From: Thalia democratica
Lineage: Eukaryota
DNA length: 64,000 bases
Direction of reading: 5' to 3'
Assembly (NCBI GenBank): GCA_965202585.1
Contig: OZ241829.1
Span: 68,572,001 to 68,636,000, forward strand
Of this stretch, positions 23,221 to 41,872 are shown piece after piece (the first letter of the stretch is position 1; each line of letters starts with the position of its first letter). The notes below the pieces were generated by a model that was given only the letters and a program-made list of their open reading frames with translations, was not told the DNA's origin and did not search any database. A program made the translations under genes and the position numbers.

Positions 23221-24732
23221 TTTTTATCGCATTTTTTTTATATTACTTTTAAGATTTTGTATAAATATTTCAAATTGGGGGATTTTTTAATTTGACAACG
23301 TCAATCTGCAACACCCCCTAACAAAAAGACCACGCAGTGCCACTAGTGATAAGTAACTATATACGATAAACAAGAGTAGAAGAAAAGTGTAAAAAGAAAG
23401 GCTGATTTGAAGTTCATGAAAACTAGTCTGAGCTTTTAAAAAATCTTAACTGTCAATAATTATCTCTCAAAATTTCAAAAAACCTCAAACAAGTTCAAAA
23501 TAGCCCAAGTCAAACGTAGTTATTTCAAAGTTTTAAACTTGACTGATTAAGTGGTGATTAAGAGGTGTTTTTACTTTAGGGAACTTATATTTTGTATCTT
23601 CAAAGCAGGAGTTTGTAATTAAAGTGAAATAGTTTAATTTTGAACCAACTTATTATTTTCAATATAAAAGCTGGCTTTTTAAGATGGATTTTGGAATACT
23701 TACTTTTAAAACAAATAAGTCTTGGTTTACTCTTATATAGTTTAGCTTTAAAGTTATTACAAAATATTAAATACTTAGCCACTACTCTTTATGGAGTTAT
23801 GAGTTTGTAATCTAGTGATTTATGAAAAGGTATAAAACTTTATAATATACTACAGTAGTTAGTTTTTGCGTTCAGTTTAAATTTATTTATTTTACATTTT
23901 AATATGCAGTAGTATTTCAAGTTTGAACAAACAATTTGAAACAATATTTTTATTATCTATAAGTGGTTCTTTAAATAAATTACTTTTAAACTTTGGTTTT
24001 AGATTAAATAGTTTCATGTAAAATTAAACAGAAAATGATAACATGATACAAATAATTTGTAAATAGAAACACATAGTACAACAGTTAAAATAATTAATTT
24101 AAAGCATAATTAAATATATCTCATCTATAATTATATCTAATAACCCTAAATTTTTAGTTTCAAAAGTAAAAGTTATTTATGTTAAAATGCATAAACACGA
24201 ATACATAATATTAATACTGAAATACGTTAATAATACACTTAAAAAGTTCAAATAAGCATAATTTTCTTATATAAAAAAGCTAAAGTAACATTATCTATTG
24301 TCAAAATTTCTACAATTGTTCGTTTAATTTGTACAAATACATATAGTTCTCAAACAATTCGGAACAAAAAAAATCAATTATAAGCAATCTTAAAAAATGA
24401 ATATTTAAATATAATAATTAGTTTATTATTGTTTCGAGTTAGTACAATTTTTTTGAATTATAAATTTTGTTTTGAGTACGTAAAAACAAAATACAAAAAC
24501 GTTTAATATATACTTTTTTTAATTAAAAGTTTAAATAGATATTAATGATTTCTTACTATACGATTTATAACATACTTAACTAAGTAATTCGAAAAAATTT
24601 AAAGAAATTTTTTTTAGATTTTACAAAAAGTAGAAAATTAAGTAAAATTAAAAGAAAAATTAAACGTATATCACAATTAAAGAGTTTGAATGTGTAGATG
24701 AGATAATAGAGTAGCTATTTAAGAAAGGGTTA

Positions 24733-25347
24733 CACAGTGCTTATTTATTTACCCGGACAGTTTCAGTCGATAATAAAATTCGAAAAAAATCTTCATTAAT
24801 ACAAACATTTTTATGCAATACAAATATTTAAGCTTTTATGCTGTTAGAAAATTTTAAGAATTGTTTTTGTAAACTCTGCAATTTATTTCTTTATGATGAC
24901 GAAATAATACGACTAAAGCTTACATTCAAACTTTGTTAAACATTAGGATTACATATTTTCTTTTTAAATTTTAAAACTTATTTTGATTTGTTTTTTCTCC
25001 TAAACAAAACTAATCTTCTTTTTTTTTAATTAAAAATTACGGGAGGTTGAATTAACCAATTTTACTTGTTTGACCCTCAAAAAACGTATTTCTGTTGAAG
25101 TCTGATGTTTTTATACCTTACAATGAATTTAAACAGGTTTTTAACAAAATATTTAGCTTTTATTATTTATCGTTTTATTGTTTTTATTCATAATTACTAT
25201 CTGTTTTAATTATAAGGCTTTTACTATTTATTATGCATTTTGTAACATACGTACAAGAACTTTTTTTTACTTATCTGGAAAAATGCTTATCCAGACATGT
25301 TTACAGAAAAATCTTGCTCAACTGGTCAAGATAAGTAAATAAGCACT
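24733..25347. mobile_element. MITE-like insertion with TTA flanks (PIF/Harbinger-like)
   Basis: Terminal agtgcttattta / taaataagcact inverted repeat; TTA on both sides; absent from the inverted arm near 40090. Confidence 0.55.
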
Positions 25348-25631
25348 TTACCATCTCTTTTTATCAAAAAAATTAAAAATTTAGCCATTTAAAAGATAAA
25401 ATAATTATATCATGTGACAAACCTACTATCTAAAAGTATAAATATTGTCAATTATACAAATTATTGTATTGTCTTTATAACTAGTAAATAAAAATACTAC
25501 ATTACTTCATATTTTAATTCTCTGCTTATGACAAACTTAAAGGAAGTAATTACAAAAAAGATTAAATGCAGAACTAAAGTAATCAAAATTTTCAAAAAAA
25601 CACCTGAGCTTCAATTATTGGCATACTAAAA

Positions 25632-27167
25632 CTAAACAGCACAAACAGATAAAAAAAAGTCATCTGATCTACAAATAAGAACACAATGTTCCCATATTGT
25701 TCCAGTTTCAACTAGTTTATCATTGCGGTAATCAAACGTTCTTATTTCTATTATTCTATTGTCTATATTTGGTTTGTTATAACCTTTGTACATGTAAACA
25801 GTATCATTTTTATCAACAGTGTACAATGGTTTGTCAATTGTTTTATAAGTCAAATACCAGTATCTATCTAGTGATCGCGGAACGATATCTTCGGCGAAGT
25901 AAAAACTTTGTTCGTTAGCGTCAAACACTAAAAACAGATTGATCCAAACATCCATAACAACTTTTTTGTACCGTTTGAGAACAAACAACACCTCAAAATC
26001 ATAGTACATAATTTTCTCGATGTATTCTTTTTGCTTATACGGTCCAAATTTTGTGCATTGACTCAAACTCTTATTACTCAGTATACTCATTGTTTTAATA
26101 CATATTGTGAGCAGGTATACTTTATGAAGGGATAGCTCTTCATCCTCACTGAATAAGAGTTGATAACAAATGCTGAGTTTTTTTATAGTCAGAGAACGAG
26201 AAACGAACTATAAATTTGTAGTAATCCCAACTACCCTTTTCATAATTAGGATAGTATGAATCTGGAAGAGAAACGTTTTAGTTTTACAAAACCACCGTGT
26301 TTCATCACTAATTGATTTACTTAATACAGATACGGAAAACTTGAACGTTTTCTTATTTTCTATAGGCGTAATCACATACAGGTTCTCATTGTCTGAACAA
26401 ACATCTGAACATCCGGTGTATTTTACATCTACGTGGTACATCTTTCCACTTATGAGATCATACTGTAGCAGAAGTGGATCGCATTCCCATTCATATTCTT
26501 TCTTGCGGATTATTAAACTATAACAGTAACTGCTCAATACTGTAAGTGAGCTTCGACTGGTAACAGTACCAAACTTTGTTTTGTTTTCATCTTCATTCAA
26601 CATTCGATATTTAAATTTGTACTCATGTCCATCAGACATAATTGTTAATGAATGCTTATGACCGTCCAGGATATACAGACCTTTGACACAAGGTTGGCAA
26701 CTTGCTTTAAATTTTAACGCAATCTCTTTAAAATCTCGAAATATGAGTGGCTGTTTTTCCAGCACACTTAACTGGTAGTCTATATGTTTTTTGTTCAAGT
26801 TGTAAATGAAATGGTCTAAGCACAACTTGTTCAAGTTTTCAATAATTAAATAGTCAGAAACTTTATATATTTCAAAAACTTCATCGTCTTCTATGTCAAT
26901 GTGATCAGTAGTGATCCAGTCAATGACTTTCTTGAATGTTTTGAAGTTTACTGGAAAGGTCACTTCAGTGAAATGGGATTTGTGATCCGAAAAGCAGGAC
27001 TTTGTAATTGATCTGAAGTAAAGAGATTTTTCGATAAACTTTGCTCTTTTTGCCATTATGACGTGCTGTTTATTCAAACGAATTCTCAAAACTTCAACTT
27101 TTATGTTCTGAACATCTTTTTGAGTGTAAATACTATTACCAACTACTGATGCTTTATTGTTGACCAT
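25632..27167 (-). pseudogene. BTB/POZ plus divergent propeller-like gene, copy A1, with a 1-nt frameshift
   Basis: N-terminus has BTB features (SLYFRSITKSCFSD...EIYKVSDYLIIENLNKLC). A TTT run at 26271-26273 corresponds to TTTT in copy A2 (39189-39192); restoring one T joins ORFs 26208..27167 and 25632..26090. No coding introns. Confidence 0.8.
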
Positions 27168-28992
27168 TGTAGATTTTTGTTTGTTAAGTAGTATAATGAT
27201 ACTCAGTTACTTAAAATATTTATGATAGCTTCTTGTAGCCAATGTTTAGAAATAGTTGATAAAAGTCAATGTTTTTATTAAACAGTTAGTAAATATTCCT
27301 GATAAAAAAATGTTATTGCTGTTTTAAATAAAAATAATGATAATTATCACCATTAAAGTTATTTGCAAAAACTTTATAATCAAAGCATTTTTGACTAAGA
27401 TAAGGTACTTTTAAATAATGTAATGAAAATTAGAAAACGTAAAAAATTTAAAAACAAATGTTTTGGTCAATAAATAGTTTCAAAATTATGATTTGTACGC
27501 TGAAGTTTTTGCAATTAAAAAACACTAAAAAATTGTAAAATAATCACCAATTTATGTACTTATCCAGTGAATTAATTTTGTTTGAACTGTATAACATATG
27601 CTTAATAATTAGAAACAAAACATGTACACTAAGGTCAAGTTTTAAAAGTATAAATTAAGTTTTTAAGCAATTGAAAAAAAGTTTTAAACCTATCTAAAGG
27701 TTTTTGTTATACTAAAAAGTCTGCTAAGTATTTTTAGTTTATTTTAATAATGTTATTTAGCATTAAAATAAAAACAAAAAAAAAATTTAATATTTGCTGA
27801 AGTTATTTCAGTCAACAACAATAGAAAACAAAAAAAATTAAACTCTTTAGTTGATTATTAAAACCAAAGAAATAAAAAATGTATAGTTAAACAAAATAAA
27901 TTTTTGATCGTTATTGATGAATGTTTACATTATTTAAAGCCTATACTTAGTGTTTACATGTGTAAAGTTAATGCATATGTAAGTGAAAAAATGATAATTT
28001 TTCATACATAAATCTAAAAGTATAACTACTTTAATACATGAAAATTAAATGATAGCATACTTAGTTAAATGATATACAAGTTTGATTATAATAATTACTA
28101 TAAAAATTTAAAACGTAAAATAAAGTATTTTGTTAACTTAAACACGAAAGAAATGTAAAAATACTAAACTTGTTTTAAAGGTATAATAAAATTTAAAATA
28201 GCTCAAACAAGCATAAACTACTTATGATAAAACAAAATGATGATTATAAAAATATAGACAAGCTTTTTACTGTTTAGTTTAAAAAAAAAATTATTTTGCG
28301 CAGAGCAGCTATAGGTAAAAAAATATATATTAGTAGTAAACAGTTTTTTACTAAAAACCTTTGAAAATTGTATTTAACTGAATTTAAACTTCAATTACTA
28401 TCTATGAGTTTTAAATTATTTTTATTTTTAAGCTGTTTCAATTAACTCTTATTCAATTTGAAATGTGCTTGGTTAAATTGAAAACTTTTATTATGCACGT
28501 TTATTAAATCTAATTTTTAATAGATTGTAGCGCATATTTTTTAGAATCAATTAATTATTTTTTAATGCGTTGTGCTGTAGAGTTGAAAAAAAAATACTAT
28601 AATAATAAATATAAAAGCCTTTCTTTGGGTTGAAAAACGTAGAACATTAATATAAAACTACGACAGTTTTTATAAAAACAAATAATATATACAAAATTCA
28701 AGTTTAAAACTTTTTTAAATAAAGTATAAGTTGTTTTATTTAATTAAGCGATGTTTTTAAAATCAATTAATATGTGAATGTATTTAGTAAAAATGTTAAA
28801 GTGTTTTACACATATAATAAAAATAGTTTAAAAAAAAGTTTTTATTGTTTTTTAAACAGTTTATTGTCATCAGCTGCAGAACACTTCAAAAGAAATATTG
28901 CTTACCTCAATGTGTTTTCTTACAAAGTGGGTTTAATGAACTGCAAACAATGTTAAACTTGACCACATTGTGATCTACTGCACATAGTCAAC

Positions 28993-30504
28993 CTAAACAG
29001 CACAAATAGTAAAAACATCGTCCTCCAGCAAATCCTGCGGAAAGCAGTGTTTCCATACAACTCCACTCTCAACTAATGCATCGTTCCGGTACTCGAACGT
29101 TCTTATTTCTTTTGTTGCCATCTCCGAGTAATCGTTCTCCTTGTAGTATCTCCACATGTAGACCGTGTCATTGCTGTCCACAGTGTAACAAGGAACACAA
29201 AACAGCTCGGTCACAACGGAAAAGACTTCAGGGTGCGGTAAGTCGGGAAGGATGTTTTCGGTGAAATAAACGCACTGGTTTTTGAAATCAAAAACTAAAA
29301 AGAGACCAGTGCTAGCAGTTATAACAACTTTTTTTGCCGATCTTAGAACAAACAACAGCTCTAGAGAGTATTTCATCAATTTTTTGATGTTTTTCTTTTG
29401 TGTGGTAGTTCCTCCTGTTCCGAAACTTATGCTTTGACCTAATTTTTTATTGCTTATAATGTTCATTGTTTTAATGCATATTGTGATCATGTACACATCA
29501 TTATGAAGGAAATCAAATAAGGACTTTTTAATTGGGTAAGCCATGAAGTAATAACATATACTTAGCTTATCGTTATCAGAAAATGTAAAAGCGATCAAAA
29601 ACACTGTATCAGTATGAAATTCTTGACTTAAAATAGCAATATTTTTAGTTTTAGAGACTTTTAATGCTTCATCATTTTTTGTTTTATTTGATACCGAAAC
29701 AAAAATTTAATAAATTTTATTACATTTTGTTGAAGTAATCACATAGAGGTTTCTTTTATCCGAACAAACTTGCGAAAATGTGGTATATTTTACTTCTGTA
29801 TGGTACAACTTACCACTCAAAATACTATATTGTAACAAAACTGATTGATACTTTGAATGATTCAAAGTACGAATTATCAAAGTGTTTGAAAAACTGTGTG
29901 ATAATATAAAACTCTGTCTATAGTCACCTAGATGTATCTTGATTTCGTGTTCATGTTCGTCTGTTAAAATTTTTAAGAAATAATCATCATCGTCCGGCGA
30001 TGACAAAATGTAAAGACCTTTAAAAGATGGCCAACCATTAGTTTTGAATTTTAATGCATCTATTATAAAGTCTCTGTACAACTGTGGGTGTTTGAACAAA
30101 ACGTTTAATTGGTAGTCAACACAACTTTTGTTCAAGCCATAAATAAAACTGTCTAAACACAACTTGCTTAAACATTCAATTTGTAAGTAATCTGAGACTT
30201 CATAAATTTCAAACATTTCATTATCAATACTATCAATGTGATCAGTAACTATATATTTTATTACTTTTTTGAATATTTCAATACTTGCTGGAAAGGTCAC
30301 TTCAGCAAACTTAGATTTGTGATCAGCAAAATAAGGTTTTGTAATTAGTCTGAAGTAATGTGACTTTTCTAACAACTTTGCTTTTTTTACCACAAACACT
30401 TGATTTTTATTTAAACGTACTTTTAAATACTTATTGTCAATGTTTTGAATACGTTTTTCAGTGGTAATGTTTTTATCAAATTCTAATGCATCACTGTTGT
30501 TCAT
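28993..30504 (-). pseudogene. BTB/POZ plus divergent propeller-like gene, copy B1, with one in-frame TAA
   Basis: ORFs 29707..30504 and 28993..29604 are in the same frame, separated only by TAA at 29707-29709 and 34 sense codons; paralogous to A1/A2 over the whole length. Confidence 0.8.
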
Positions 30505-32640
30505 TACAAGTTTTAGTGGTAAACGTTATAATGTAAAGCTGTAAAAGAAGTTATATTAATTTGTTGAATTTTAAACATAAAGTATTGACTCATTAATTTT
30601 CAATTCATTTCAGTAAGTAAAAAAAAAGTGTATTGTCTTGGCAACTACTGTCAAAGAACTATGGTGAAACAATTTTTGAAAAAAAAATCAGGTAAAAACT
30701 ATTCTTAACTCCAGATGGTTTAATATTTAAATAAGCAGTAATTCAGCGTACAACTTCAGATTTTATTATTTTGTTACTAATGTCTGTGAACACTTATGCG
30801 CTACACAAACTAAGTTGTAATAAAAAGTAACCTTTTTAAAATGACAGAAAAAAATGTTTGTATATGCTTAATAATTTAAAACAATAATTAAAAGAAAGTA
30901 AAAGTAAAATCAACAAATTTATAAAAACTTTATTTCGAATATATTTTTTATTAATTTCAGTAATTTTTTGTTATAAAACAATATCTGATAGCCTTTAAAC
31001 TGTACAGAACTTGTTAAAAACATTTACCTAAGAAAAACTATTAATGAAGTGTTTTTTAAAATTTTTTAATACTTTGATAAATTTTAGATATTAAATATGA
31101 CAAATTTTATAAACAAATTCAAAATGATAATTTTACATGGTACAGAAGTCTTAATACTAATTAATTTTAGTTTTATGTGTTAACAAGTGTAAATAAAAAG
31201 ATTTTAAACTAGATTACAACTAAAACTAAGCAATTATATTTATGTAACTTAAGTTTGTTTACTGTTTAAAACTTTTAAGTTATAATTTATTTTCAACTAC
31301 ACTAACTCAATTCAACAAAACAAACGTTTTAAACTTCAATTTCAGTTTAAAAATTAAATAACAACTAAACAAATATATTAAACAAAATGAAAACCTCAAT
31401 TTTAGTTTTGTAACGAGTAACAAAAACTTATTTAAATCCTAAACTTACTTTACCTTTAAGTAATAAAACAAAGTCATAAAACTAGACTGAATTAGAAACG
31501 TGATTATCAATATAACCAGTTTTTTTAAAGCATTTTAAACAATATTTGTTGAAAACTCACATGGCTACCTTTAAAAAATATTATTCTTTTTTTTTGTATT
31601 TAACTTTGCTCTCTCTCTTTAATTGGTACTTTTCCATTACAAAATACTTGTTATTTGTAAAACTGTAAAACAATAAAGTTAAGTAGTTATTGCTTGCGCT
31701 AGAAAAATTAAATTTTCTTTTGGTTTTTTATATAATTTTTAACACTTGGGATTTCTGCATGTAATTATTATCGTATAATCAGATAAAAACTCTTTTAAAA
31801 CATGTTTTAAAAATGTTAAAATATTTTTTGTTTTAAATATTTTTAAAATTAGACTTCTAAAAATATCGAAAAAGTAAGCTACTAAAATAGCTTTTATTTT
31901 ATATAACTACAGTAATAAAAAAACTGCAATCAACAAAATATTCTAGCTTAAACTTTAATAAAGAGTATTGTTTTTAAAGTAAAACATGTGTATACAAAAA
32001 TAATATAACTTCATTTATCAGTAAGTAAAAAATCTCGATTGAATATTTTTATTACTTATCAACACCAATTCACATTGAAATGAGATGGTGTTAATGGGAG
32101 AAAAGATTTTTTTTTTTCAAATTTGAACCATACGCGTCGGCTGCAGTTCTAAGGTCGCTTCTGATTGGATAATGTTTTACTTATTTTCATTTCACTAATA
32201 AAAATGGGGAAAACGGATTTCTTCAAAAAGAAAAGTTTTATTAATCAAATAAAAGTCAAGTTGTAACTAATAAAACTTTTCTTTTTGTTTTTTTTTATGT
32301 TTGGTTACGTAGGGTTAGGGATAAGGGTATGAATGTTTTAGATATTCTGCTGTATAGTCAGTTTACTTCATTTGCATAAATTTGCATAATGTCATTAATG
32401 AAAACATTTTCAACAACTTACAACTGCAGCCGACCCGAAGCTTACTATAATAAGTAATATATAGCTACCTTGAGCAGTGACTTGAAGAGAATACTTTTTT
32501 AAAAACAAAAAGTGTATAGTTTAATGTCTGGTAGAAGCTTTAAAACAAGCTTACGAAATGTTGCATTAAATTTACTTAATTTACTGGTAGGCTTAAATGG
32601 TTTGTTTTTAAGATGTTTTTACTCGATCTATATCAAAACT
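30505..32640. repeat. Upstream region of B1, present in two inverted copies (35450-37563 upstream of B3; ~33670-34919 upstream of B2)
   Basis: Reverse-complement matches, e.g. 31600-31700 with 33690-33800 and 36350-36440; 32040-32640 with 35450-36010. Confidence 0.85.
32134..32436. mobile_element. ~300-bp MITE with G(C/G)GTCGGCTGCAGTT TIRs and a 9-bp TSD (MULE-like)
   Basis: Flanks gaaccatac / gaagcttac; the inverted paralogous copy keeps gaagcttac on the other side. Contains a CCAAT box and two ATTTGCAT octamers. Confidence 0.7.
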
Positions 32641-33474
32641 GTTTAATTTTTCGCTCAAAATTCTACTAACAACAAAACTTTAATAAACAACAACCAATGT
32701 TACTTTTAAATATACTGTAACAGACTCCTACTGGTTAAAAACGTTGTATTTTTTGGAATTAAATAATATAACTAAAGTAAAAAAATTGGAAAAACTTGTT
32801 ACTTAAAAACGATTAAAAGACTTTTATGCTTAAGATAAGTGTTTATTAGAACTATAACAAAATATCTTTTTTCGTTTGCAAGCATAAAGTTTTTTGAAAC
32901 TTTCTAAATTTCAAATGCATGTTTAAATCAAAAGTTTTAGAAGTTTTAAAAATATAAAAAATTTGATTTTAATTTAAGAGATAGATTACTAATAAAAAAT
33001 CAAGCTTAAAAAATTTTTCACAGTCAATGTTTTAAACTCTAGTAAAGTCGCATTGATTCAGCTAAAAATCAGTCAGTTTTTTTTTCAGTCTACTCGAATT
33101 TGGTAGTTTTTTATTTAATTAGAACAACTATTTTTTATAATGATTGATAACCAAATTATTTAAGCTTAAATTTTTTAAACTTGTGAATATAAGGCTAATG
33201 TGATGTGAATTACTGTAAGAAAGTGTTAAATACTACAAGTGTTAATTAAAATAAAAACTGCATATTATAACTATTAAAGATTTGAACAACTTTAAAGTTC
33301 ATTTCAAAACAAGCCTTTAATAAAAATTGACTTAAAAATTAATTCAACCTTTTAATAAAATTCAGCCAGATTAATCAGTTGTTTATTCTCTTAACTTTTT
33401 GTTTATAAGCTTTATTTATAACTTTTACATTGTTACGTTATAGCCAACACATTTTTAACGAAATAGTAAAATAG

Positions 33475-33501
33475 GGCGGGGCACTTTTGATAAGTATAAA
33501 A
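33475..33501 (+). promoter_or_regulatory. Possible GC-box plus TATA near the centre of the palindrome
   Basis: GGGCGGGG followed ~13 nt later by TATAAAA; motif reading only. Confidence 0.2.
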
Positions 33502-34919
33502 CATTTTTTGGGTCAACTCCTTAAAGAATATCTTAGCGGAATATTTAACTATTACAAACCGTACTATAAATAATGAATGGTTGAAAAACGAGTGACATAG
33601 TCTTTTTAATAAACTATTTTTGCATTAAAAAGATATCAAACACTTATTTCGTTGATTTTTTTTTAAAGCTATTGTTTTAAATTTTAATACAAACTTTAAC
33701 TTTATTGTTTTACAGTTTAACATAAAACAAGTATTTCGTAATGGAAAAGTACCAAATAAAAAGAGAGAGTAAAGTTAAATACAAAAAAAAAAAAGAATAT
33801 TAACTTTTAGTTGCAGCCATGTGAGTTTGTTTTCAACAAATTGTTAAAAATGCTTATAAAAGAAACTGGTTATACTTATATTGATAGTCATGTTTCTAAA
33901 TCGGTTAAGTTTTATGACTTTGTTTAACTAGTTATAAGTAAAGTAAGTTTAGTTTTCAAGTAAATTTTTTGTTACTCGTTTAAAAACTAAAATTGAGTTT
34001 TTCATTTTGTTTATTATATTTAAGTAGTTGTTATTTGATTTTTATACTGAAGTTGAAGTTTCAAATTTTTGTTTTGTTAAATTAACTTAGTGTACTTGAA
34101 AAAAAAAAGTTGTAACTTAAAAGTTTTAAACAGTGAACAAACTTAAGTTACATGAGAGCAATTGCTTAGTTTGAGTTGTAATCTAGTTTAAAAAAATTTT
34201 ATTTACACTTCTTAAGTCATCAAACTAGAATTAAATAGTATTAAAATTTCTGAACCATGTAGTATAATACATTTAAATAGTTTTTGAAACTTTGCCATTT
34301 TTAATATCTAAACTTTTATCATAGTAACAATTTAAATTAAAAATGTTTCAATAAAAGTTTTTTTAGGTAGATGTTTTAAACAAGTTCTGTTCAGTTTAAA
34401 GGCTATCAGATATTGCTTTACAAGAAAAAATTGCTAAAATTATAGACATAAAAAAATATTCTTATTAAAGTTCTAATAATTTTGTTTGTTTTAATTTTAG
34501 TTACTTTTAATACTCGTTTCAAATTATGATATACATAAAAACAACTTTATAGTTTTTTTTTTAATTATTCAAAACTTGTTTTTATACACTTCCTGTTTCT
34601 TACAACTAAATTTATGTAGTGCATAAATACTCACATTATTAATGATTAAAAAAATACTTTTTAAAGATGTACACCATACAACTATTTATAAAAATTAAAA
34701 ACATTTTGGTGTTGAGGTCGTGTATAGTTTATTTATAAATATTTCTATTTCTCCAAGCTTAGTTATTTGACAGTATTTGCCAAGACAACACACTTTATCT
34801 TAGTTACTTAAAGACTTTAAAAACCAATTAATGAGCCTATTTTTTATATTTTGAATTCAGTAAAATATTAAAACTTTTTTTACAGCTTTACATTATAACG
34901 TTTACCACTAAAACTTGTA

Positions 34920-35430
34920 ATGAACAATAGTGATGCATTAGAAATTGATAAAAACATTAACACTGAATAACGTGTTCAAAACACTGACAGTAAATACTTA
35001 AAAGTACGTTTAAATAAAAATCAAGTGTTTATGGTAAAAAAAGCAAAGTTGTTAGAAAAATCACACTACTTCAAACTAATTACAAAACCTTGTTTTGCTG
35101 ATCACATTACTCTGAATTTGCTGAAGTGACCTTTCCAGCAAGTATTGAAATATTCAAAAAAGTAATAAAATATATAATTACTGATCAGATTGATAGTATT
35201 AATAATGAAATGTTTGAAATTTATGAAGTCTCAGATTACTTGCAAATTGAATGTTTGAGCAAGTTGTGTTTAGACAGTTTCATTTATGGCTTGAACAAAA
35301 GTTGTGTTGACTACCAATTAAACGTTTTGTTCAAACACCCACAATTGTACAGAGACTTTATAATAGATGCATTAAAATTTAAATCAAATTGTTGGCCATA
35401 CTTTAAAGGTCTTTACATTTTGGCATCGCT
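34920..35430 (+). pseudogene. Truncated BTB gene copy B2
   Basis: ATG at 34920, TAA at codon 17 (34968-34970), a +2 frameshift near 35105; homology to B1 ends at ~35430. Confidence 0.85.
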
Positions 35431-35647
35431 AACTTTTTCCGCTAGAAAAAAATAGTTATGATATATATTCAGCAAAAACATCTTAACAACAAACCACTAA
35501 GTCTACCAGTAAGGTAAGTAAATTTTATGCAACATTTCATAAGCTTCGTTTTAAAGCTTCTACTAGACATTAAACTATACAATTTTATATTTAATAAAGT
35601 ATTCTCTTCAAGTAACTCGTAGCTGTATATTACTTAATAAAAGATTT

Positions 35648-35922
35648 GGGTCGGCTGCAGTTTGAATTGTTGAAAACTTTTTCATTCATTACATTATGCA
35701 AATTTATGCAAGCAAAGTAAATTGATAAAACAAAGAATATTTGAAACATTCATACCCTTATCCCTAACCCACCTTACCCAAAGTTTTAATCTACACCTTT
35801 ATCCCTAACCTACTGTAACCAAATAACAAAAACAAAAAGAAAAACTTTATTTATTAAAACTTGAAATGAAAATAAGTAAAATATTAGCCAATCAGAAGCA
35901 ACCTTAGAACTACAACCAACGC
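35648..35922. mobile_element. Inverted paralogous copy of the 32134-32436 MITE
   Basis: gggtcggctgcagtt at 35648, decayed opposite TIR ending at 35922, followed by gtaagcttc. Confidence 0.65.
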
Positions 35923-37563
35923 GTAAGCTTCAAATTTAAAAAACAAAAAAAATATTTTCTCCCATTTACACCATCTCATTTCAATGTGAATTAGTGTTGA
36001 TATGTAAAAAAAATATTCAGTCGAAATTTTACACTTAGTGATAAATAAAATTATATTATCTTTGTATACACATTTACTACCTTGAAAATAAGAAACTATA
36101 TAAAGTTTTAACTAATATACTTAGTTGACTTCAATGTTTTAACAATGTAAATATATAAAAAAAATACTTTTTTAATTGTTAACATTTTCGATTTTTCTTA
36201 TAGACAAGGTTTTAAAAACATTTGAAATAATCAAAAAGCGTTTATATCTGATTATATGATTTTAACTACATGCAAAAACACCAAGTTTTGAAAAATATTT
36301 TAAAAAGCAAAATAGTAGTTAAACTTTAAGCGGAAACAATAATTAAACTAACTTTATTGTTTTACAAATAACAAAAAATTTCGTAATAGAAAAGTGCCAA
36401 ATAAAAAGAGAGAGTAAAGTTAAGTGCAAAAAAGAAGAAGAGACTAATAACTTTTAATTGCGGTCATATGATTTTGTTTTCACAAGTTTTTCTAAAATTG
36501 CTTTAAAAAAGAAACTGGTTATATTGATAGTCATGTTTTTATTCAGTTTATTTTTATGACTTTGTTCAACTAGTTACAGTTAAAGTAAGTTTAGAACTCA
36601 AATAAGTTTTTGTTACACGCTTTAAAACTAAAATTTAGGTATTCATTTTGTTTATTATGTTTTTGTAGTTTTTATTTAATTTTTATACTGAAGTTTAAAG
36701 TGTATGTTTTGTTGAATGGATACTTAGTATACTTGAAAATAAAGTCATAACTTACAAGTTTTAAACAGTGAACAAATTAAGTTACATAAAAGTAATTGCT
36801 TAGTTGTAGTCTTGCTTAAAATTTTTTTATTTAGAATTTTTATAAAATAAAGCTAAAACTAATTAATATTAAGATTTATGTACCATGTAAAACTATAATT
36901 TTAAATTTATTTTATAAACTTTGTCGTTTTTAATATCTAAACTTTTATCATCGTAACAATTTAGATTAGAAAATTTTTAATAATAGTTTTTATTACGTAG
37001 ATGTTTAAACAAGTTCTGTTCAGTTAATAGGCTATCGCCTATTAAATATTGTTTCACATTAAAAAATTACTGAAGTTAAAACATATATATTTTAAATAAA
37101 GATTTTATAATTCTGTTTATTTTAATTTTAGTTACGTATAATACTCGTTTCAAATTGTAATATAATATGTAATCAATTTGATTATAATATATAAATTATA
37201 ACAAGTATTTTTTTTTTCTGTTTTTTCGGAAAAGGTTTTTATACATTTGCTTTTTCTTACAACTTAGTTTATGTAGTGCGTTAGTGTTCACAGACATCAG
37301 TGGTTAAATAATATAATTTGAAAATGTACGTTGAATTACTATTTTGATAAATTTTAAGCCATATCGTGTTAAAAATGGTTTTATTTTTTTTTTTAAGTGT
37401 TTCAGCTTAGTTAATTGACTTTAGTTACCAAGACAACACAATTTATTTTAGCTACCTAAAAAATTAAAATTTTATGAGTAAATATTTTATTATTTGAAAT
37501 CAGCAAACTAAAAGAGCTTTTTTTACAGCTTCACATTGTAACGTTTACCACTAAAATTTTGTA

Positions 37564-37675
37564 ATGAAAAACAGTGATGCAATAGAAATTGATAAAAACA
37601 TTACCAATGAAACACTATTCAAAATACTGACAATAAGTATTTAAAAGTACGTATGAATAAAAATCAAGTGTTTTA
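37564..37675 (+). pseudogene. 5' fragment of BTB gene, copy B3
   Basis: ATGAAAAACAGTGATGCAATAGAAATTGATAAAAAC... matches the B1/B2 start and stops after ~110 nt, where A-type upstream sequence begins. Confidence 0.8.
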
Positions 37676-38294
37676 AAAAACTGTTTTTAATGTTAATGCT
37701 AAATAACATTATTAAATTCAAACTAAAAATACTTAGCATACTTTTTAGTATAACGAAACTTTTAAATAGGTTTAAAACTTTTATTCAATCGCTTAAAAAC
37801 TTATATTATACTTTTAAAAGTTAACCATAGTGTACATGTTTTGTTTCTAATTATTAAGCATATGTTATACAGTTCGAACAAAATTATTTCACCGGTTAAG
37901 TACATAAGTTATTGAATATTTTTCACTTTTTTAGTGTTTTTTTAATGTAAAAATTTCAGCATACATATCATAATTTTTAAATCATTTATTGATCAAAATA
38001 TTTGTTTTTAAATTTTCTACCTTTTCTAATTTTCATTACATTATTCTAAAGTACATTTATCTTAGACAAAAATGCTTTGATAATAAAGTTTTTGCAAATA
38101 ACTTTAATAGTGATAAATAACATTATTTTTATTTAAAACAGCAATAACATTGTTTTTATCAGGAATATTTACTAACTGTTTAATAAAAACATAGAATTTT
38201 ATAAACTATTTCTTAACATTGGATACAAGAAACTAACATAAATATTTTAATTGTAACTGAATATCTTTATACTACTTAAAAACAAAAATCTACA

Positions 38295-39821
38295 ATGGTC
38301 AACAATAAAGCACCAGTAGTTGGTAATAGTATTTACACTCAAAAAGATATTCAGAACACAAAAGTTGAAGTTTTGAGAATTCGTTTTAATAAACAGCACG
38401 TCATAATGGCAAAAAAAGCAAAGTTTGTCGAAAAATCTCTTTACTTCAGATCAATTACAAAGTCCTGCTTTTCGGATCACAAATCTCATTTCACTGAAGT
38501 GACCTTTCCAGTAAACTTCAAAACATTCAAGAAAGTCATTGACTGGATCACTACTGATCACATTGACATAGAAGACGATGAAACTTTTGAAATATATAAA
38601 GTTTCTGATTATTTAATTATTGAAAATTTGAACAAGTTGTGCTTGGACCATTTTATTTACAACTTGAACAAAAAACGTATAGATTACCAGTTTAGTGTAC
38701 TGGAAAAACAGCCACTGGTATTTAGAGATTTTAAAGAGATTGCGTTAAAATTTAAAGCAAGTTGCCAACCTTGTGTTAAAGGTCTGTATATCCTGGACGG
38801 TCATAAGCATTCATTAACAATTATGTCTGATGGACATGAGTACAAATTCAAATATCGAATGTTGAATGAAGATGAAAACAAAACAAAATTTTGTACTGTT
38901 ACCTGTCGAAGCTCACTTATAATATTAAGCAGTTACTCTAATAGTTTAATAATCCGAACGATAGAATGTAAATGGGAATGTGATCCACTTCTGTTACAGT
39001 ATGATCTTATAAGTGGAAAGATGTACCACTTAGATGTAAAATACACCAGATGTTCAGATGTTTGCTCAGACAATGAGAACCTGTATGTGATTACGCCTAC
39101 AGAATATGAGAAAACGTTCAAGTTTTCCGTATCTGTATTAAGTAAACCAATTAGTGATGAAACACGGTGGTTTTGTAAAACTAAAACGTTTTCTCTTCCA
39201 GATTCAGACTATCCTAATGATGAAAAGCGTAGTTGTGATTACTACAAATATGTAGTTCGTTTTTCGTTCTCTGATCATGAGAAACTCAGCATTTGTTAAC
39301 AACTATTAAATTGTGAGGACGAAGAGCCATACCTTCATAATGTATACCTGCTCACAATATGTATTAAAACAATGAATATACTGAGTAATAAGAGATTTAA
39401 TCAATGCTTAAAATTTGGACAAAAAGAATACATCAAGAAGATGATGTACCATGATTTTGAGGTGTTGTTTGTTCTCAAACAGGACAAAAAAGTTGTTATG
39501 GATGTTTGGATCAATCTCTATATAGTTTTTGATGCTAACGAGCAAAGTTTTTACTTTGCCGAAGATATCGTTCCGCTATCACAAGATAGATACTGGGATT
39601 CGACTCATAAATTTATTTGCGGACAAGAGTACACGGTTGATAAAAATGATACTGTTTACATGTACATGGGTTATGACAAACCTGATACAAACAAGGGAGT
39701 AATAGAAATAAGAACGTTTGATTACCGCAATGATAAATTAGTTGAAACTGGAACAATATGGGAACATTATGATCGTTTTTATATATTAGATGACCATTGT
39801 GTATCTGTTTGTGCTGTTTAG
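38295..39821 (+). pseudogene. BTB/POZ plus divergent propeller-like gene, copy A2, with one in-frame TAA
   Basis: ORFs 38295..39299 and 39372..39821 are in frame; TAA at 39297-39299 corresponds to TAT (Tyr) in A1. Confidence 0.8.
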
Positions 39822-41872
39822 TTTTAGTATGCCAATGATTGTAAGCTCGGGTGTTTTGTTGAAATATTTGATTAATTCAGTTCTGCATTCAATTATTTTC
39901 ATATATGTTTGGCATAAGTAGAGAATTATAGTATCAAGTATTGTATCATTTTTATTTAAAGTTGTAAAGACAGTACAACATTTTGTATACTTGACAATAG
40001 TTTAAACTTTTAGAAAGTAGATTTTTCACAAGATAAATTATTTTAAATTTTACATTGTTAAATTTTTATTCATTTTATAAAAAAAACTTGGTATAACCTC
40101 TTTTTAAAAATCTATTTCATAATCATATACATATTCAAACTCTTCGATTGTGATATGAGTTTAAAAATCTAAGAACTAAACAAAACTGTCTACATTCTGT
40201 AATATCTAAGAAACATTTTCTTTTAAATTTTTCGTCCTATTTAGTTAAGTACGTTACAAATCGTATAATCAGAAATCGTTAATATTGATTTAAACTAAAA
40301 ATATATTAAAAATACATTTAAACTTGTATATTAATCTGTATACATATACATATATTTACTAATAGTTTTTTGTACATACGTTTTCAAAACAGAAACTCGA
40401 AAATGTTTTAAAACACCGAAATATTAATAAATTAATTGTCATATTTAAGTGTTTTTTATTCAAGATTGATTTAAACTGATTTTTTGCTTTTCCAAAATTA
40501 TTTGACAACCATATGTATTTGTACAAAATAAACAAAGTTCAATAAATTTTGACAATAAATAACTTTGCTTTGGCGTTTTTCATATAAAAAAAGTATACTT
40601 ATTTGAGCTTTAAAATTTGCTTTTAATGTACCTTAGTATTAATATTATGTATTCTTGTTGATTTATTTGAACATAAATAAATTTTATTTTCGGAACTAAA
40701 TATGTAGGGTTATCAAATATAATCTTAAAAGAGATATATTTAATTATGCTTCAAATAAACTATTACAACTTTTTTACAAAATGGTTCTCTTTACAAACAT
40801 ATTGTATCAAGTTATCCTATTCTGTTTATTATTTACATGAAACTATTTAACTTAAAACTAGAGTGCAGTTGTAAAACTAATTAAAGAGCTATTTTATAAA
40901 TAATAAAAACATTATTTAATATCTTGTTCAAATAAAAATGCTTCAACTTAAAAATAAACAAAAAATAAATTCATACTTAAAGCATACTGTAACATATTTT
41001 AAAGTTTTATATCTTATCATAAATCATTAAATAAAGAACTAAAAACTCCATACAAAGTAGTAGCTAGTTAGTTTTTGCAATGAAACTAAAAATTTTAAAA
41101 GTGGAAACGAATTTTTGATTTTAAAAGTATATATCTCAAAATTCATATCAAAAAAATGTGTGTTTATATTAAAAATATTAAGTTTGTTCAAAATTAAACC
41201 ATTTCACTTCATTTACATACTTCTGCTTTGTAGATAGCAACTAAACTTCCCTAAAGTAAAAATACTTCTTAGTTACCACCCAATCAGGCTAGTTAAAAAT
41301 TCTGAAAAATCCGTATTACTTGGGCTAGTTTGAACTTGTTTGAGTTTTTTGGAAGTTTGAAGATATAGTTATTGACAGATAAGGTTTTTAAAGCTCAGAC
41401 TAGTTTTCATGAACTTCAAATCAACCTTTCTTTTCACACTATTCTTTTACTTTCATATATTGTATGTGTTTACCTGTTACTATTTAAGTAGTTATTTAAC
41501 AGTTATTAAAAGTACATATTGTCACAATCAGTTCCATCTAGCATTGAAAACATTTTTTATTCATAAACTTATTTCGTTTTAAGTAGCTCTTTCACGGAAA
41601 AAAGTTGCGTTCAAAACAAAAATTTCTGCTGTTAAATTCTTGTTTTTCTAAATCATAGTTTAAAATATTTCCAATAAATTAATAAATTTATAAAACTACA
41701 CACATTAAATGGTAAACTAAATTGTTTACATATCATAGCATAGAAAACTACAAATTTGTATGCTAATTGAAAGTTAAACTAAATGTTAAATGTTAATAAA
41801 GTTGTTGAAAAATTTAAATAACTAGAAGTTAACTTTTCACAAACACAAAACAAAATATTAATATTGTATATA

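What the first reader, a model, noticed from the sequence alone, without database searches (positions are those of the whole stretch)
25632..39821. Patchy hypervariation in the C-terminal halves of near-identical BTB paralogs
Seen: A1 and A2 BTB regions are almost identical, while the C-terminal part alternates invariant blocks (YTVDKNDTVYMY; EIRTFDYRNDKLVETGTIWEH; DFEVLFVLK) with radically changed, indel-free patches (RSLDRYWYLTYKTIDKPL vs LSQDRYWDSTHKFICGQE; KGYNKPNIDNRII vs MGYDKPDTNKGVI; CVLICRSDDFFL vs YDRFYILDDHCV). B1 differs again at the same patches. Known: BTB proteins are Cullin-3 adaptors, and nematode F-box and MATH-BTB families show positive selection in substrate-binding domains. 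Inference: a lineage-specific, diversifying Cul3 adaptor family that may target foreign or selfish proteins.
Basis: partly seen in the sequence, partly recalled or inferred. Interest (0 to 1): 0.7.

Follow-up and report, generated by a model that had tools for sequence, protein, structure and literature searches.

The report
Fast-changing loops in duplicated BTB-propeller genes
Two young mirror-image copies of a ubiquitin-ligase-adaptor-like gene kept their scaffold but rewrote three neighbouring surface loops faster than silent sites changed. This hints at a short burst of adaptive re-targeting after duplication. The gene family as a whole shows no such signal, and most copies at this locus are already broken.

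Summary
A1 (27167..25632, minus strand) and A2 (38295..39821, plus strand) are the outer genes of an inverted duplication.

- **Gene structure:** Each is one ~510-codon frame, not two exons. They belong to a family of at least 85 mostly intact, intronless genes. The architecture is BTB, a two-helix linker and a six-bladed propeller, KLHL/KBTBD-like by fold.
- **Rates:** Synonymous divergence is uniform (0.115-0.149). dN rises from 0.028 to 0.137 along the gene.
- **The three patches (43 codons):** They hold 32 changes at codon positions 1+2 and 4 at position 3. The post hoc ω is about 4.6. They are pure substitutions, have no donor paralog, and lie in same-face loops around blade 6.
- **Limits:** Site classes defined in advance give ω of 0.85-2.2, not significantly above 1. 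The excess over neutral holds if neutral divergence is at most 0.15, but not at the 3' flank's value of about 0.22.
- **Wider comparisons:** Thirteen other young pairs show ω of about 0.3-0.4 in these columns, and a relative's variants are nearly invariant in patches 1-2.
- **State of the locus:** A2, B1 and B2 are disabled. A1's two frameshifts are disputed by read contigs.

Verdict: a post-duplication burst on a binding face is plausible. Family-wide diversifying selection is not supported. Cul3 binding, expression and targets were not tested.

The parts
23345..32117 (.). Left arm of the inverted duplication, carrying A1 and B1
   Evidence: Inverted-repeat pairs I1-I25 and the arm alignment. 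Identity to the right arm is about 0.90 in the A-gene 5' flank, 0.86-0.99 inside the gene and 0.74-0.84 in the 3' flank.
33696..41482 (.). Right arm of the inverted duplication, carrying the B2 remnant and A2, with an internal 2.64-kb direct duplication (33716-34916 versus 36361-37559)
25632..27167 (-). A1: single-frame BTB-propeller gene. In the assembly the frame is interrupted by a -1/+1 pair of homopolymer indels.
   Evidence: In the A2 register there is no stop other than the one inside the shifted segment.
26799..27074 (-). A1 BTB domain (aa 32-123)
   Evidence: Pfam PF00651, E = 4.7e-07, 30.4 bits against a cut-off of 20.5
26178..26273 (-). A1 out-of-frame segment, bounded by the T-run at 26271-26273 (one T fewer than A2) and the A-run at 26178-26184 (one A more than A2)
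   Evidence: Alignment. In one search every laid contig of X1 and X2 carries the extra base at 26270. Contigs of X2 and X3 lack one base at 26178, while one X1 contig keeps it.
25824..25877 (-). A1 patch 1 (loop between strand D of blade 5 and strand A of blade 6)
25749..25787 (-). A1 patch 2 (tip of the B6-C6 hairpin)
25650..25685 (-). A1 patch 3 (loop between strand D of blade 6 and the C-terminal closing strand)
28993..30504 (-). B1: older tandem paralog of A1 (42% identical in the best local alignment with P0011-type relatives, 46% to the A2 C-terminal part). One frame, broken by a TAA at 29707-29709 (codon 266).
   Evidence: Contigs of 2471 nt (X1) and 1186 nt (X2) cover the stop with 0 differences.
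34920..35429 (+). B2: dead remnant of the B gene, with a TAA at codon 17 (34968-34970), a 2-nt insertion near 35107, and homology to B1 ending at 35429
38295..39821 (+). A2: single-frame BTB-propeller gene with an in-frame TAA at 39297-39299 (codon 335; A1 and B1 have Tyr there)
38388..38663 (+). A2 BTB domain (aa 32-123)
   Evidence: Pfam PF00651, E = 3e-06, 27.8 bits
39576..39629 (+). A2 patch 1 (codons 428-445)
39666..39704 (+). A2 patch 2 (codons 458-470)
39768..39803 (+). A2 patch 3 (codons 492-503)

Best explanation
A1 and A2 are the outer genes of an inverted duplication about 18 kb across. Each is a single-exon gene of about 510 codons from a lineage-specific family with at least 85 copies.

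The encoded protein has a BTB domain, a two-helix linker and a six-bladed beta-propeller. By predicted fold this is the architecture of KLHL/KBTBD substrate receptors of Cullin-3 ligases. Cul3 binding itself is inferred, not tested.

Since the duplication (dS about 0.12), the BTB domain and the propeller core have stayed under purifying selection. Three neighbouring loops of one propeller face around blade 6 were rewritten in both copies: the D5-A6 loop, the tip of the B6-C6 hairpin, and the loop from D6 to the closing strand. The changes are point substitutions almost only at codon positions 1 and 2, at 2.5-4 times the silent rate.

The most likely reading is a short burst of selection-driven re-specification of the presumed substrate-binding surface after duplication. 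It happened in a gene cluster that is now decaying by birth-and-death, with A2, B1 and B2 disabled. It is an episode in this pair, not a standing family-wide arms race.

Shown: gene structure, rates, clustering, absence of a donor, loop topology. Inferred: the selection, the binding role of the face, and the Cul3 link.
For: - **Rates along the gene:** dS is flat (0.115, 0.120, 0.149 in thirds) while dN rises (0.028, 0.062, 0.137).
- **Patches versus the rest:** In the 43 patch codons pN is 0.32 against pS of 0.09, giving ω of 4.6 (Fisher p = 0.02). Against the gene-wide synonymous rate, p = 7e-6. The rest of the C-terminal third has ω of 0.36 (p = 0.014), so the region was translated and constrained.
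- **Codon positions in the patches:** 14, 18 and 4 changes at positions 1, 2 and 3. The position-3 rate (0.093) equals the rate elsewhere (0.078, p = 0.77). This argues against hypermutation, an older age, or import from a diverged donor. Positions 1+2 against position 3 gives p = 0.0008.
- **Scan-corrected neutral simulation:** p < 5e-5 at neutral divergence d = 0.09, 7.5e-4 at 0.118 and 0.05 at 0.15.
- **Loops defined from the structure model:** Only the three blade-6 loops exceed neutral among 23 loops. The D6-closing loop has 10 changes at positions 1+2 and 0 at position 3 in 11 codons (p = 8.7e-5 at d = 0.118).
- **One face:** B-C and D-A loops have ω of 1.40, the opposite-face loops 0.19 and the strands 0.58.
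- **Both lineages changed:** 7 polarised changes on A1 and 8 on A2 inside the patches.
- **No donor:** whole-genome DNA searches find only A1, A2 and B1. Short-word BLAST of the patches against about 80 family loci gives only 11-17-nt matches scattered over non-homologous positions and strands, none significant.
- **No hidden indels**.
- **Same scan on 13 other young pairs:** A1-A2 is by far the strongest outlier (corrected p = 3.5e-6). A weaker burst occurs in a D4-A5 loop of L076/L077.
- **Fold:** full-length model with pLDDT 84 and pTM 0.84. Foldseek top hits are KBTBD4, KBTBD2, K13 and KLHL22 (E about 1e-12), and KLHL12, IPP and KBTBD proteins in Swiss-Prot models. The propeller-only model scores Z of 12-15 against six-bladed propellers including KBTBD2, KBTBD12, KBTBD4, KLHL7 and Keap1.
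Against: - **Post hoc patches:** The patches were chosen because they differ. Site classes defined independently do not reject ω = 1. Family-variable columns give 1.0-1.3 for the whole propeller and 2.0-2.2 for the last blades (N-versus-S p = 0.16-0.31). Columns variable among independent A-type relatives give 0.85-1.44. Face-1 loops give 1.40 (p = 0.56).
- **Neutral yardstick:** The 3' flank of the arms is about 22% diverged, against about 10% for the 5' flank. At d = 0.20 the scan-corrected excess disappears (p = 0.77), and the best loop does not survive correction for 23 loops at d = 0.22.
- **Small data:** two sequences and 43 codons. Rates come from Nei-Gojobori counts, not likelihood codon models.
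- **No recurrence elsewhere:** 13 young pairs have ω of 0.37 in the homologous columns. P0158 against P0011 gives 0.51. Variants in the P0011 90% cluster differ in patches 1-2 at one residue in one fragment.
- **Copy status:** A2 carries a nonsense codon, and A1's frame is uncertain.
- **Expression:** no RNA run holds the locus.
Confidence: 0.5

Rival explanations
1. Relaxed constraint only. After duplication, the blade-6 loops of two redundant copies drifted neutrally on the way to pseudogenisation. The apparent ω above 1 is a winner's-curse effect of picking the most different stretches.
For: - Site classes defined in advance give ω of 0.85-1.44, not different from 1.
- The same loops are the most variable columns across the whole family and in the A-type relatives, so they tolerate change.
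- A2, B1 and B2 are disabled.
- With neutral divergence of about 0.2, as in the 3' flank, the excess is not significant.
Against: - Neutral drift cannot exceed the silent rate. Yet positions 1+2 in the patches run at 0.37 per site, against 0.093 at position 3 of the same codons, 0.087 at the gene's four-fold sites and pS of 0.118.
- 20 of 23 loops stay at or below neutral, and only the three around blade 6 exceed it.
- The blocks between the patches have synonymous changes but no replacements, so both copies were under selection for most of the time since duplication.
Confidence: 0.3
2. One reading: the whole family is a diversifying set of Cul3 adaptors under sustained positive selection on the substrate face, for example against viral or selfish proteins.
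For: - The expansion is large and lineage-specific, with some pseudogenes.
- The variable positions lie on one propeller face.
- Local bursts occur in A1/A2 and, more weakly, in L076/L077 and L030/L031.
- From established knowledge: the nematode MATH-BTB and F-box families behave this way (Thomas 2006, recalled from memory; PMC8120010 for F-box genes).
Against: - Thirteen young pairs have ω of 0.26-0.37 in every region, and no pooled 15-codon window exceeds 0.71.
- The independent A-type pair has ω of 0.51 in the patches.
- Patches 1-2 are almost invariant among close variants of P0011.
- There is no evidence on targets, infection response or Cul3 binding.
Confidence: 0.1
3. Gene-conversion mosaic. 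Arm-to-arm conversion reset most of the gene, and the patches are either older unconverted remnants or short imports from a copy that is not in the assembly, such as the lost 3' part of B2 or another haplotype.
For: - The 3' flank is twice as diverged as the gene and the 5' flank, which suggests an older duplication with later homogenisation.
- A third haplotype at 25870-25873, at the start of patch 1, sits at about half depth in the source sample and is the only form laid for X3 and X4.
- L049/L050 shows a window where position 3 is also elevated, as a conversion tract would look.
Against: - Position-3 and synonymous divergence inside the patches is not raised (4 of 43 codons; pS 0.09). The binomial probability of 4 or fewer at a rate of 0.22 is about 0.03 (my own calculation from the counts).
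- Codons coding the same residue within the patches are almost all identical: 1 synonymous difference in 15.
- No donor is found in the genome or among about 80 family loci, and B1, the stand-in for B2, does not match either patch set.
Confidence: 0.07
4. Artefact: assembly error or haplotypes mis-assembled as an inverted duplicate.
For: The two A1 frameshifts lie in homopolymers and are contradicted by read contigs.
Against: - The arms differ structurally: B2 is truncated, there is a 2.64-kb internal duplication and a 600-bp indel.
- An X2 contig reproduces all 12 A2-specific bases of patch 3, and other contigs reproduce A1 exactly. These contigs may come from the same sample as the assembly.
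Confidence: 0.03

Closest known systems
BTB-BACK-Kelch substrate receptors of Cullin-3 ligases (KLHL and KBTBD proteins, e.g. KBTBD4, KBTBD2, KLHL12, Keap1)
   Same: An N-terminal BTB domain (Pfam PF00651) is followed by a C-terminal six-bladed propeller. The full-length model's best structural matches are these proteins (Foldseek E about 1e-12 to 1e-13). The propeller alone scores Z of 13-14.5 against KBTBD2, KBTBD12, KBTBD4, KLHL7 and Keap1. The variable loops are of the B-C and D-A type, which form the substrate pocket in Keap1 (established knowledge).
   Different: No Kelch or BACK Pfam match in any of 49 members. Sequence identity to the structural matches is 6-10%. Only two helices lie between the BTB domain and the propeller, instead of a full BACK domain. 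The genes are intronless and expanded to at least 85 copies in one lineage. The propeller matches YWTD and TolB propellers about as well as Kelch ones. Cul3 binding was not tested.
Expanded MATH-BTB (BATH) and F-box adaptor families of nematodes and plants with positive selection in the substrate-binding domain
   Same: A lineage-specific expansion of ubiquitin-ligase adaptors by tandem or segmental duplication, with birth-and-death turnover. The scaffold-binding domain is conserved and the presumed substrate face is variable.
   Different: The recognition domain here is a propeller, not a MATH or FTH domain. A faster-than-silent rate is seen in one pair and weakly in two or three others, while pooled young pairs have ω of about 0.3.
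BTB-less stand-alone Kelch propeller arrays in the same genome
   Same: Intronless, fast-turning-over propeller genes whose binding-face loops vary at about the neutral rate. This is the same kind of result as my tests on site classes defined in advance.
   Different: Those genes lack a BTB domain and are recognisable as Kelch by sequence. The family here keeps the BTB domain and has no detectable Kelch motif.
Poxvirus BTB-Kelch proteins (e.g. A55)
   Same: BTB plus propeller. The A55 BTB domain is among the sequence matches of the family profile (E = 2e-4).
   Different: Viral origin, with full BACK and Kelch repeats. There is no sign that the family here is viral.

Membership tests
BTB/POZ domain superfamily | Pfam PF00651 match above the gathering score | tested here: met
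   A1 scores 30.4 bits, A2 27.8 and B1 26.6 against a cut-off of 20.5. 46 of 49 family members match. PDB BTB domains of ZBTB8A, KBTBD4, Keap1 and KBTBD2 match the family profile.
BTB-BACK-Kelch (KLHL/KBTBD) CRL3 substrate receptors | BACK domain between the BTB domain and the propeller | tested here: not met
   No BACK Pfam match in 49 members at E of 0.01 or less. The model shows only two helices (residues 123-135 and 141-153) before the first propeller strand at 160.
BTB-BACK-Kelch (KLHL/KBTBD) CRL3 substrate receptors | Kelch repeats recognisable by sequence | tested here: not met
   No Kelch Pfam family matches in 49 members. The profile search of PDB sequences matches BTB domains only.
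BTB-BACK-Kelch (KLHL/KBTBD) CRL3 substrate receptors | C-terminal six-bladed beta-propeller fold | tested here: met
   The P0158 propeller model has 24 strands in six four-strand blades, with pLDDT 84.9 and pTM 0.86. Z is 12-15 against six-bladed propellers, including KBTBD and KLHL Kelch domains, though not standing out from YWTD or TolB propellers.
BTB-BACK-Kelch (KLHL/KBTBD) CRL3 substrate receptors | BTB/3-box binds the Cullin-3 N-terminal domain | not tested
   No Cul3 sequence of this organism was retrieved and no complex prediction was run. The phi-x-E contact motif was not checked against a solved complex.
Adaptor families under pervasive diversifying selection (nematode MATH-BTB / F-box type) | Lineage-specific expansion with pseudogenes (birth-and-death) | tested here: met
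   85 scored matches out of 234 candidates. Most are intact ORFs of 480-530 aa and about 20 carry stops. The local cluster has three disabled copies out of four.
Adaptor families under pervasive diversifying selection (nematode MATH-BTB / F-box type) | dN/dS above 1 at substrate-face sites, recurring across paralogs | tested here: not met
   Pooled over 13 young pairs, ω is 0.26, 0.30, 0.32 and 0.37 by region. The highest pooled 15-codon window is 0.71. P0158 against P0011 gives 0.51 in the patches.
Adaptor families under pervasive diversifying selection (nematode MATH-BTB / F-box type) | dN/dS above 1 at substrate-face sites in the A1/A2 pair itself | tested here: inconclusive
   Post hoc patches give ω of 4.6 (p = 0.02). 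The scan-corrected p is 7.5e-4 to 0.05 for neutral divergence of 0.118-0.15, but 0.77 at 0.20. Classes defined in advance give ω of 0.85-2.2, not significant.

The most novel reading that the evidence does not exclude
The intronless BTB-propeller family (at least 85 copies) is a germline-encoded, diversified recognition repertoire. After each duplication, one or a few binding-face loops are re-specified by positive selection, as in A1/A2 and L076/L077. This would give a marine planktonic animal a changing set of Cullin-3 receptors that mark foreign proteins (viral, transposon or symbiont) for degradation.
Probability: 0.12. Interest if true: 0.7.

Novelty: new member of a known kind. Interest (0 to 1): 0.4.

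Why it matters
If the burst is adaptive, this locus is a clean natural example of how a ubiquitin-ligase adaptor is re-aimed. Three adjacent loops of one blade changed by single-base replacements at first and second codon positions, while the scaffold was untouched. It would also mark an uncharacterised, highly diverged BTB-propeller family as a candidate recognition repertoire in a little-studied marine animal. If the burst is not adaptive, the locus is an ordinary case of unconstrained loops in redundant duplicates that are being lost.

Tried and rejected
- **Two-exon gene model with a short intron:** rejected. The two ORFs of A2 and of B1 are in one frame, separated by a single stop, and paralogs are uninterrupted ORFs.
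- **Compensated frameshifts inside the patches:** rejected. Allowing gaps gives no gain, and the shifted translations are full of stops.
- **Conversion from a third paralog:** no donor in the genome DNA searches or by short-word BLAST against about 80 family loci.
- **Local hypermutation or an older age for the patches:** not supported. The position-3 rate equals the rest of the gene.
- **BTB near-identity caused by homogenisation:** rejected. dS is the same along the gene.
- **Expression:** no RNA run holds the locus and only contigs could be laid, so nothing can be said.
- **Reads as a test of the lesions:** only partly informative. A2-derived and third-haplotype contigs cross-map on A1.
- **Likelihood codon models (PAML, HyPhy):** not installed. 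Nei-Gojobori counts, codon-position counts and simulations were used instead.
- **Mapping on 3-D coordinates:** model coordinates are not exposed. The face assignment rests on strand order and loop parity only.
- **Naming the organism:** not possible with these tools. One relative (P0001) traces to a Tara Oceans marine-metagenome record. Earlier scan notes call the organism a pelagic tunicate, unchecked.
- **Literature searches:** no description of this family was found.
- **Cul3 complex prediction:** not attempted.

Full report
**What is at the locus.** The window is AT-rich (21-30% GC around the finding). It lies on an 85.7-Mb contig of an 802-Mb assembly. Positions 23.3-41.5 kb form an inverted duplication.

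- A1 (27167..25632) and B1 (30504..28993) lie on the minus strand.
- A truncated B2 (34920..35429) and A2 (38295..39821) lie on the plus strand.

In A2 and B1 the two ORFs share one frame and are separated by a single TAA (39297-39299 and 29707-29709). In A1 they are separated by a -1/+1 pair of one-base homopolymer indels with a stop in the shifted stretch. Elsewhere in the genome the family consists mostly of uninterrupted single-exon ORFs of 480-530 aa. There were 85 scored matches out of 234 candidates, and about 20 of them carry stops. B2 has a TAA at codon 17, a 2-nt insertion, and loses homology at 35429.

**Are the lesions real?** Only contigs of public runs could be laid.

- Every laid contig of the two runs from the best-holding sample carries the extra base at 26270, which restores the A2-like T-run.
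- Contigs of X2 and X3 lack one base of the A-run at 26178. One X1 contig keeps it.
- With both lengths corrected, A1 is a full-length open frame, so A1 is probably intact in at least one haplotype.
- The B1 stop lies inside contigs of 2471 nt and 1186 nt that have no differences.
- The A2 stop could not be checked.
- An X2 contig reproduces all 12 A2-specific bases of patch 3.
- A third haplotype at 25870-25873, at the start of patch 1, sits at about half depth in the source sample. It is the only form laid for the second organism (X3) and one metagenome run (X4).

No RNA run holds the locus.

**The observation.** It is confirmed. A1 and A2 differ at 7 of the first 165 residues. In the last third, invariant blocks alternate with three rewritten stretches at A2 codons 428-445, 458-470 and 492-503. 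Non-synonymous differences are clustered: 0 of 10,000 permutations reach the observed window variance. Synonymous differences are not clustered. Allowing gaps does not improve the alignment of any patch, so these are pure substitutions.

**Rates.** Nei-Gojobori dS is flat along the gene: 0.115, 0.120 and 0.149 in codons 1-165, 166-334 and 336-508. dN rises over the same thirds: 0.028, 0.062 and 0.137. The near-identical BTB region is therefore purifying selection, not homogenisation.

- In the 43 patch codons pN is 0.32 and pS 0.09, giving ω of 4.6 (Fisher p = 0.02). Against the gene-wide synonymous rate, p = 7e-6.
- The rest of the C-terminal third has ω of 0.36 (p = 0.014). It shows synonymous changes but few replacements, so the region was translated and constrained for most of the time since duplication.
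- By codon position the patches hold 14, 18 and 4 differences. The position-3 rate (0.093) equals the rest of the gene (0.078, p = 0.77). In patch 3, seven consecutive codons each differ by one base, six of them at position 2.

This pattern argues against hypermutation, an older age for the patches, and import from a diverged donor. Consistent with that, whole-genome DNA searches with either C-terminal part find only A1, A2 and B1. Short-word BLAST of each patch against about 80 family loci gives only 11-17-nt matches scattered over non-homologous positions and strands, none significant. Polarising with relatives shows that both copies changed: 7 changes on A1 and 8 on A2 inside the patches, and 15 and 23 outside.

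**How strong is 'faster than neutral'?** The patches were picked because they differ, so I corrected for that in several ways.

1. **Scan under whole-gene neutrality.** I asked how often the best three windows reach 32 differences at positions 1+2. The answer is p < 5e-5 at neutral divergence 0.09 (four-fold and position-3 sites), 7.5e-4 at 0.118 (gene-wide pS), 0.05 at 0.15 and 0.77 at 0.20. The 5' flank of the arms is about 10% diverged, but the 3' flank is about 22%, so the yardstick matters.
2. **Site classes defined without A1/A2.**
   - Family-variable columns give ω of 1.0-1.3 for the propeller and 2.0-2.2 for the last blades (N-versus-S p = 0.16-0.31; positions 1+2 against 3, p of about 0.02).
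   - Columns that differ among independent A-type relatives give 0.85-1.44.
   - Loops of the B-C and D-A type give 1.40 (p = 0.56), against 0.19 for the opposite-face loops and 0.58 for strands.
3. **Per-loop test on 23 loops taken from the structure model.** Only the three loops around blade 6 exceed neutral. The D6-closing loop has 10 changes at positions 1+2 and 0 at position 3 in 11 codons. That gives p = 8.7e-5 at d = 0.118, 6.5e-4 at 0.15 and 0.012 at 0.22, before correction for 23 loops.

The excess is therefore real if the gene's own silent sites are the yardstick. It is borderline if the 3' flank is the yardstick.

**Is it a property of the family?** No.

- Thirteen other young pairs (protein identity 66-94%) have ω of 0.26, 0.30, 0.32 and 0.37 in the N-terminal, middle, C-terminal-rest and patch-homologous columns.
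- No pooled 15-codon window exceeds 0.71.
- The same window scan makes A1/A2 the clear outlier (corrected p = 3.5e-6). Weaker bursts occur in L076/L077 (D4-A5 loop, 9 of 24 sites with no position-3 change) and in L030/L031. A window in L049/L050 looks like a conversion tract because position 3 is raised too.
- Two intact A-type relatives from ENA metagenome assemblies were found: P0158 (511 aa) and P0011 (508 aa), 73% and 68% identical to the first 334 residues of A2. They are hypervariable at the same three loops and invariant in the blocks between.
- Between those two relatives the patches have ω of 0.51. Between A and either relative ω is 1.2-2.3, not significant.
- In patches 1-2, the five members of the P0011 90% cluster that cover them differ at one residue in one fragment. 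Patch 3 varies at 4 of 12 positions.

**What the protein is.**

- Pfam finds only BTB: above the cut-off in A1, A2 and B1, and in 46 of 49 members. No Kelch or BACK match appears in any member.
- AlphaFold models are confident. The full-length paralog has pLDDT 84 and pTM 0.84. The P0158 propeller has pLDDT 85 and pTM 0.86.
- The models show a BTB domain, two helices, then 24 strands in six four-strand blades closed by the C-terminal strand.
- Foldseek's best matches to the full model are KBTBD4, KBTBD2, Plasmodium K13 and KLHL22 in the PDB (E about 1e-12 to 1e-8), and KLHL12, IPP, calicin, KBTBD and Keap1 in Swiss-Prot models.
- The propeller alone scores Z of 12-15 against many six-bladed propellers. 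Kelch domains are among the best but do not stand apart from YWTD or TolB propellers.

The family therefore has the architecture of a CRL3 BTB-Kelch receptor, but lacks a full BACK domain and any sequence-level Kelch signature. Cul3 binding is an inference.

By strand order, patch 1 is the D5-A6 loop, patch 2 is the tip of the B6-C6 hairpin, and patch 3 is the loop from D6 to the closing strand. All three are of the loop class that forms the substrate pocket in Keap1-type propellers (established knowledge).

**Reading.** The best-supported account is a post-duplication burst of amino-acid replacement on one face around blade 6 in both copies. It is probably helped by positive selection. It sits within a palindromic cluster that is now decaying by birth-and-death. 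Pure relaxation of constraint is the main rival and cannot be excluded with two sequences. A standing family-wide arms race, conversion from a third paralog, and artefact are each disfavoured by direct tests.

One relative (P0001) traces to a Tara Oceans marine-metagenome record and two marine-metagenome runs hold parts of the locus. Earlier notes of this scan call it a pelagic tunicate. They report that BTB-less Kelch arrays of the same genome also vary on the binding face at about the neutral rate. I did not check those notes. The scan had not followed up this BTB-propeller family before, as far as the look-ups show.

Noticed in passing
window 25632-25646, 39807-39821; L004-L047 ORF ends: Almost every family member ends in Cys-x-Val (CAV, CVV, CFV, CYV, CMV and similar). 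The Cys, third from the end, is invariant in the 10-sequence alignment (C516). It lies in the closing strand of the propeller. Whether it is only structural or a C-terminal motif (a short lipidation or PDZ-type ending) is open.
   Followed up: no
window 23345-25600 versus 39870-41482, compared with 27168-27780 versus 37675-38294: The 3' flanks of A1 and A2 are about 22% diverged, while the 5' flanks and silent sites are about 10%. This suggests an older duplication whose inner part was later homogenised between the arms.
   Followed up: partly
window 33716-34916 and 36361-37559: A 2.64-kb direct duplication (74-86% identical blocks) places a copy of the B-gene upstream region in front of A2. 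The left arm has no matching stretch between A1 and B1.
   Followed up: no
window 24792-25392: About 600 bp are present only in the left arm, just downstream of A1. This is an insertion there or a deletion in the right arm.
   Followed up: no
window 30505-30546, 34878-34919, 37520-37559: A conserved element of about 40 nt starts with a T-run and the bases ACAG. It lies 5 nt upstream of the B1 and B2 start codons and recurs about 735 nt upstream of A2. It may be a (trans-)splice acceptor or a 5' UTR element.
   Followed up: no
window 25870-25873: A third haplotype at the start of patch 1 would change two residues. It sits at about half the contig depth in the source sample and is the only form laid for the second organism (X3) and a marine metagenome run (X4).
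   Followed up: partly
G000 C6:18.91/19.37 Mb and 18.94/19.33 Mb; C1:95.48/95.90 Mb; C1:88.07/88.09 Mb; C1:40.13/40.16 Mb: Many of the youngest family pairs lie on opposite strands, some hundreds of kilobases apart. Inverted (palindromic) duplication seems to be a common way for this family, and perhaps this genome, to grow.
   Followed up: no
L089 and L090 (metagenome contigs encoding P0158 and P0011): dS between these two A-type relatives climbs from 0.15 in the BTB part to 0.86 in the C-terminal part. They may be mosaics, from 5' gene conversion or chimeric contigs.
   Followed up: no
L076 / L077 (G000 C9:49.12 Mb and C2:17.83 Mb), columns near A2 codon 370: This is a second, weaker local burst: 9 differences at positions 1+2 and none at position 3 in 12 codons of the D4-A5 loop (corrected p of about 0.002).
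   Followed up: partly
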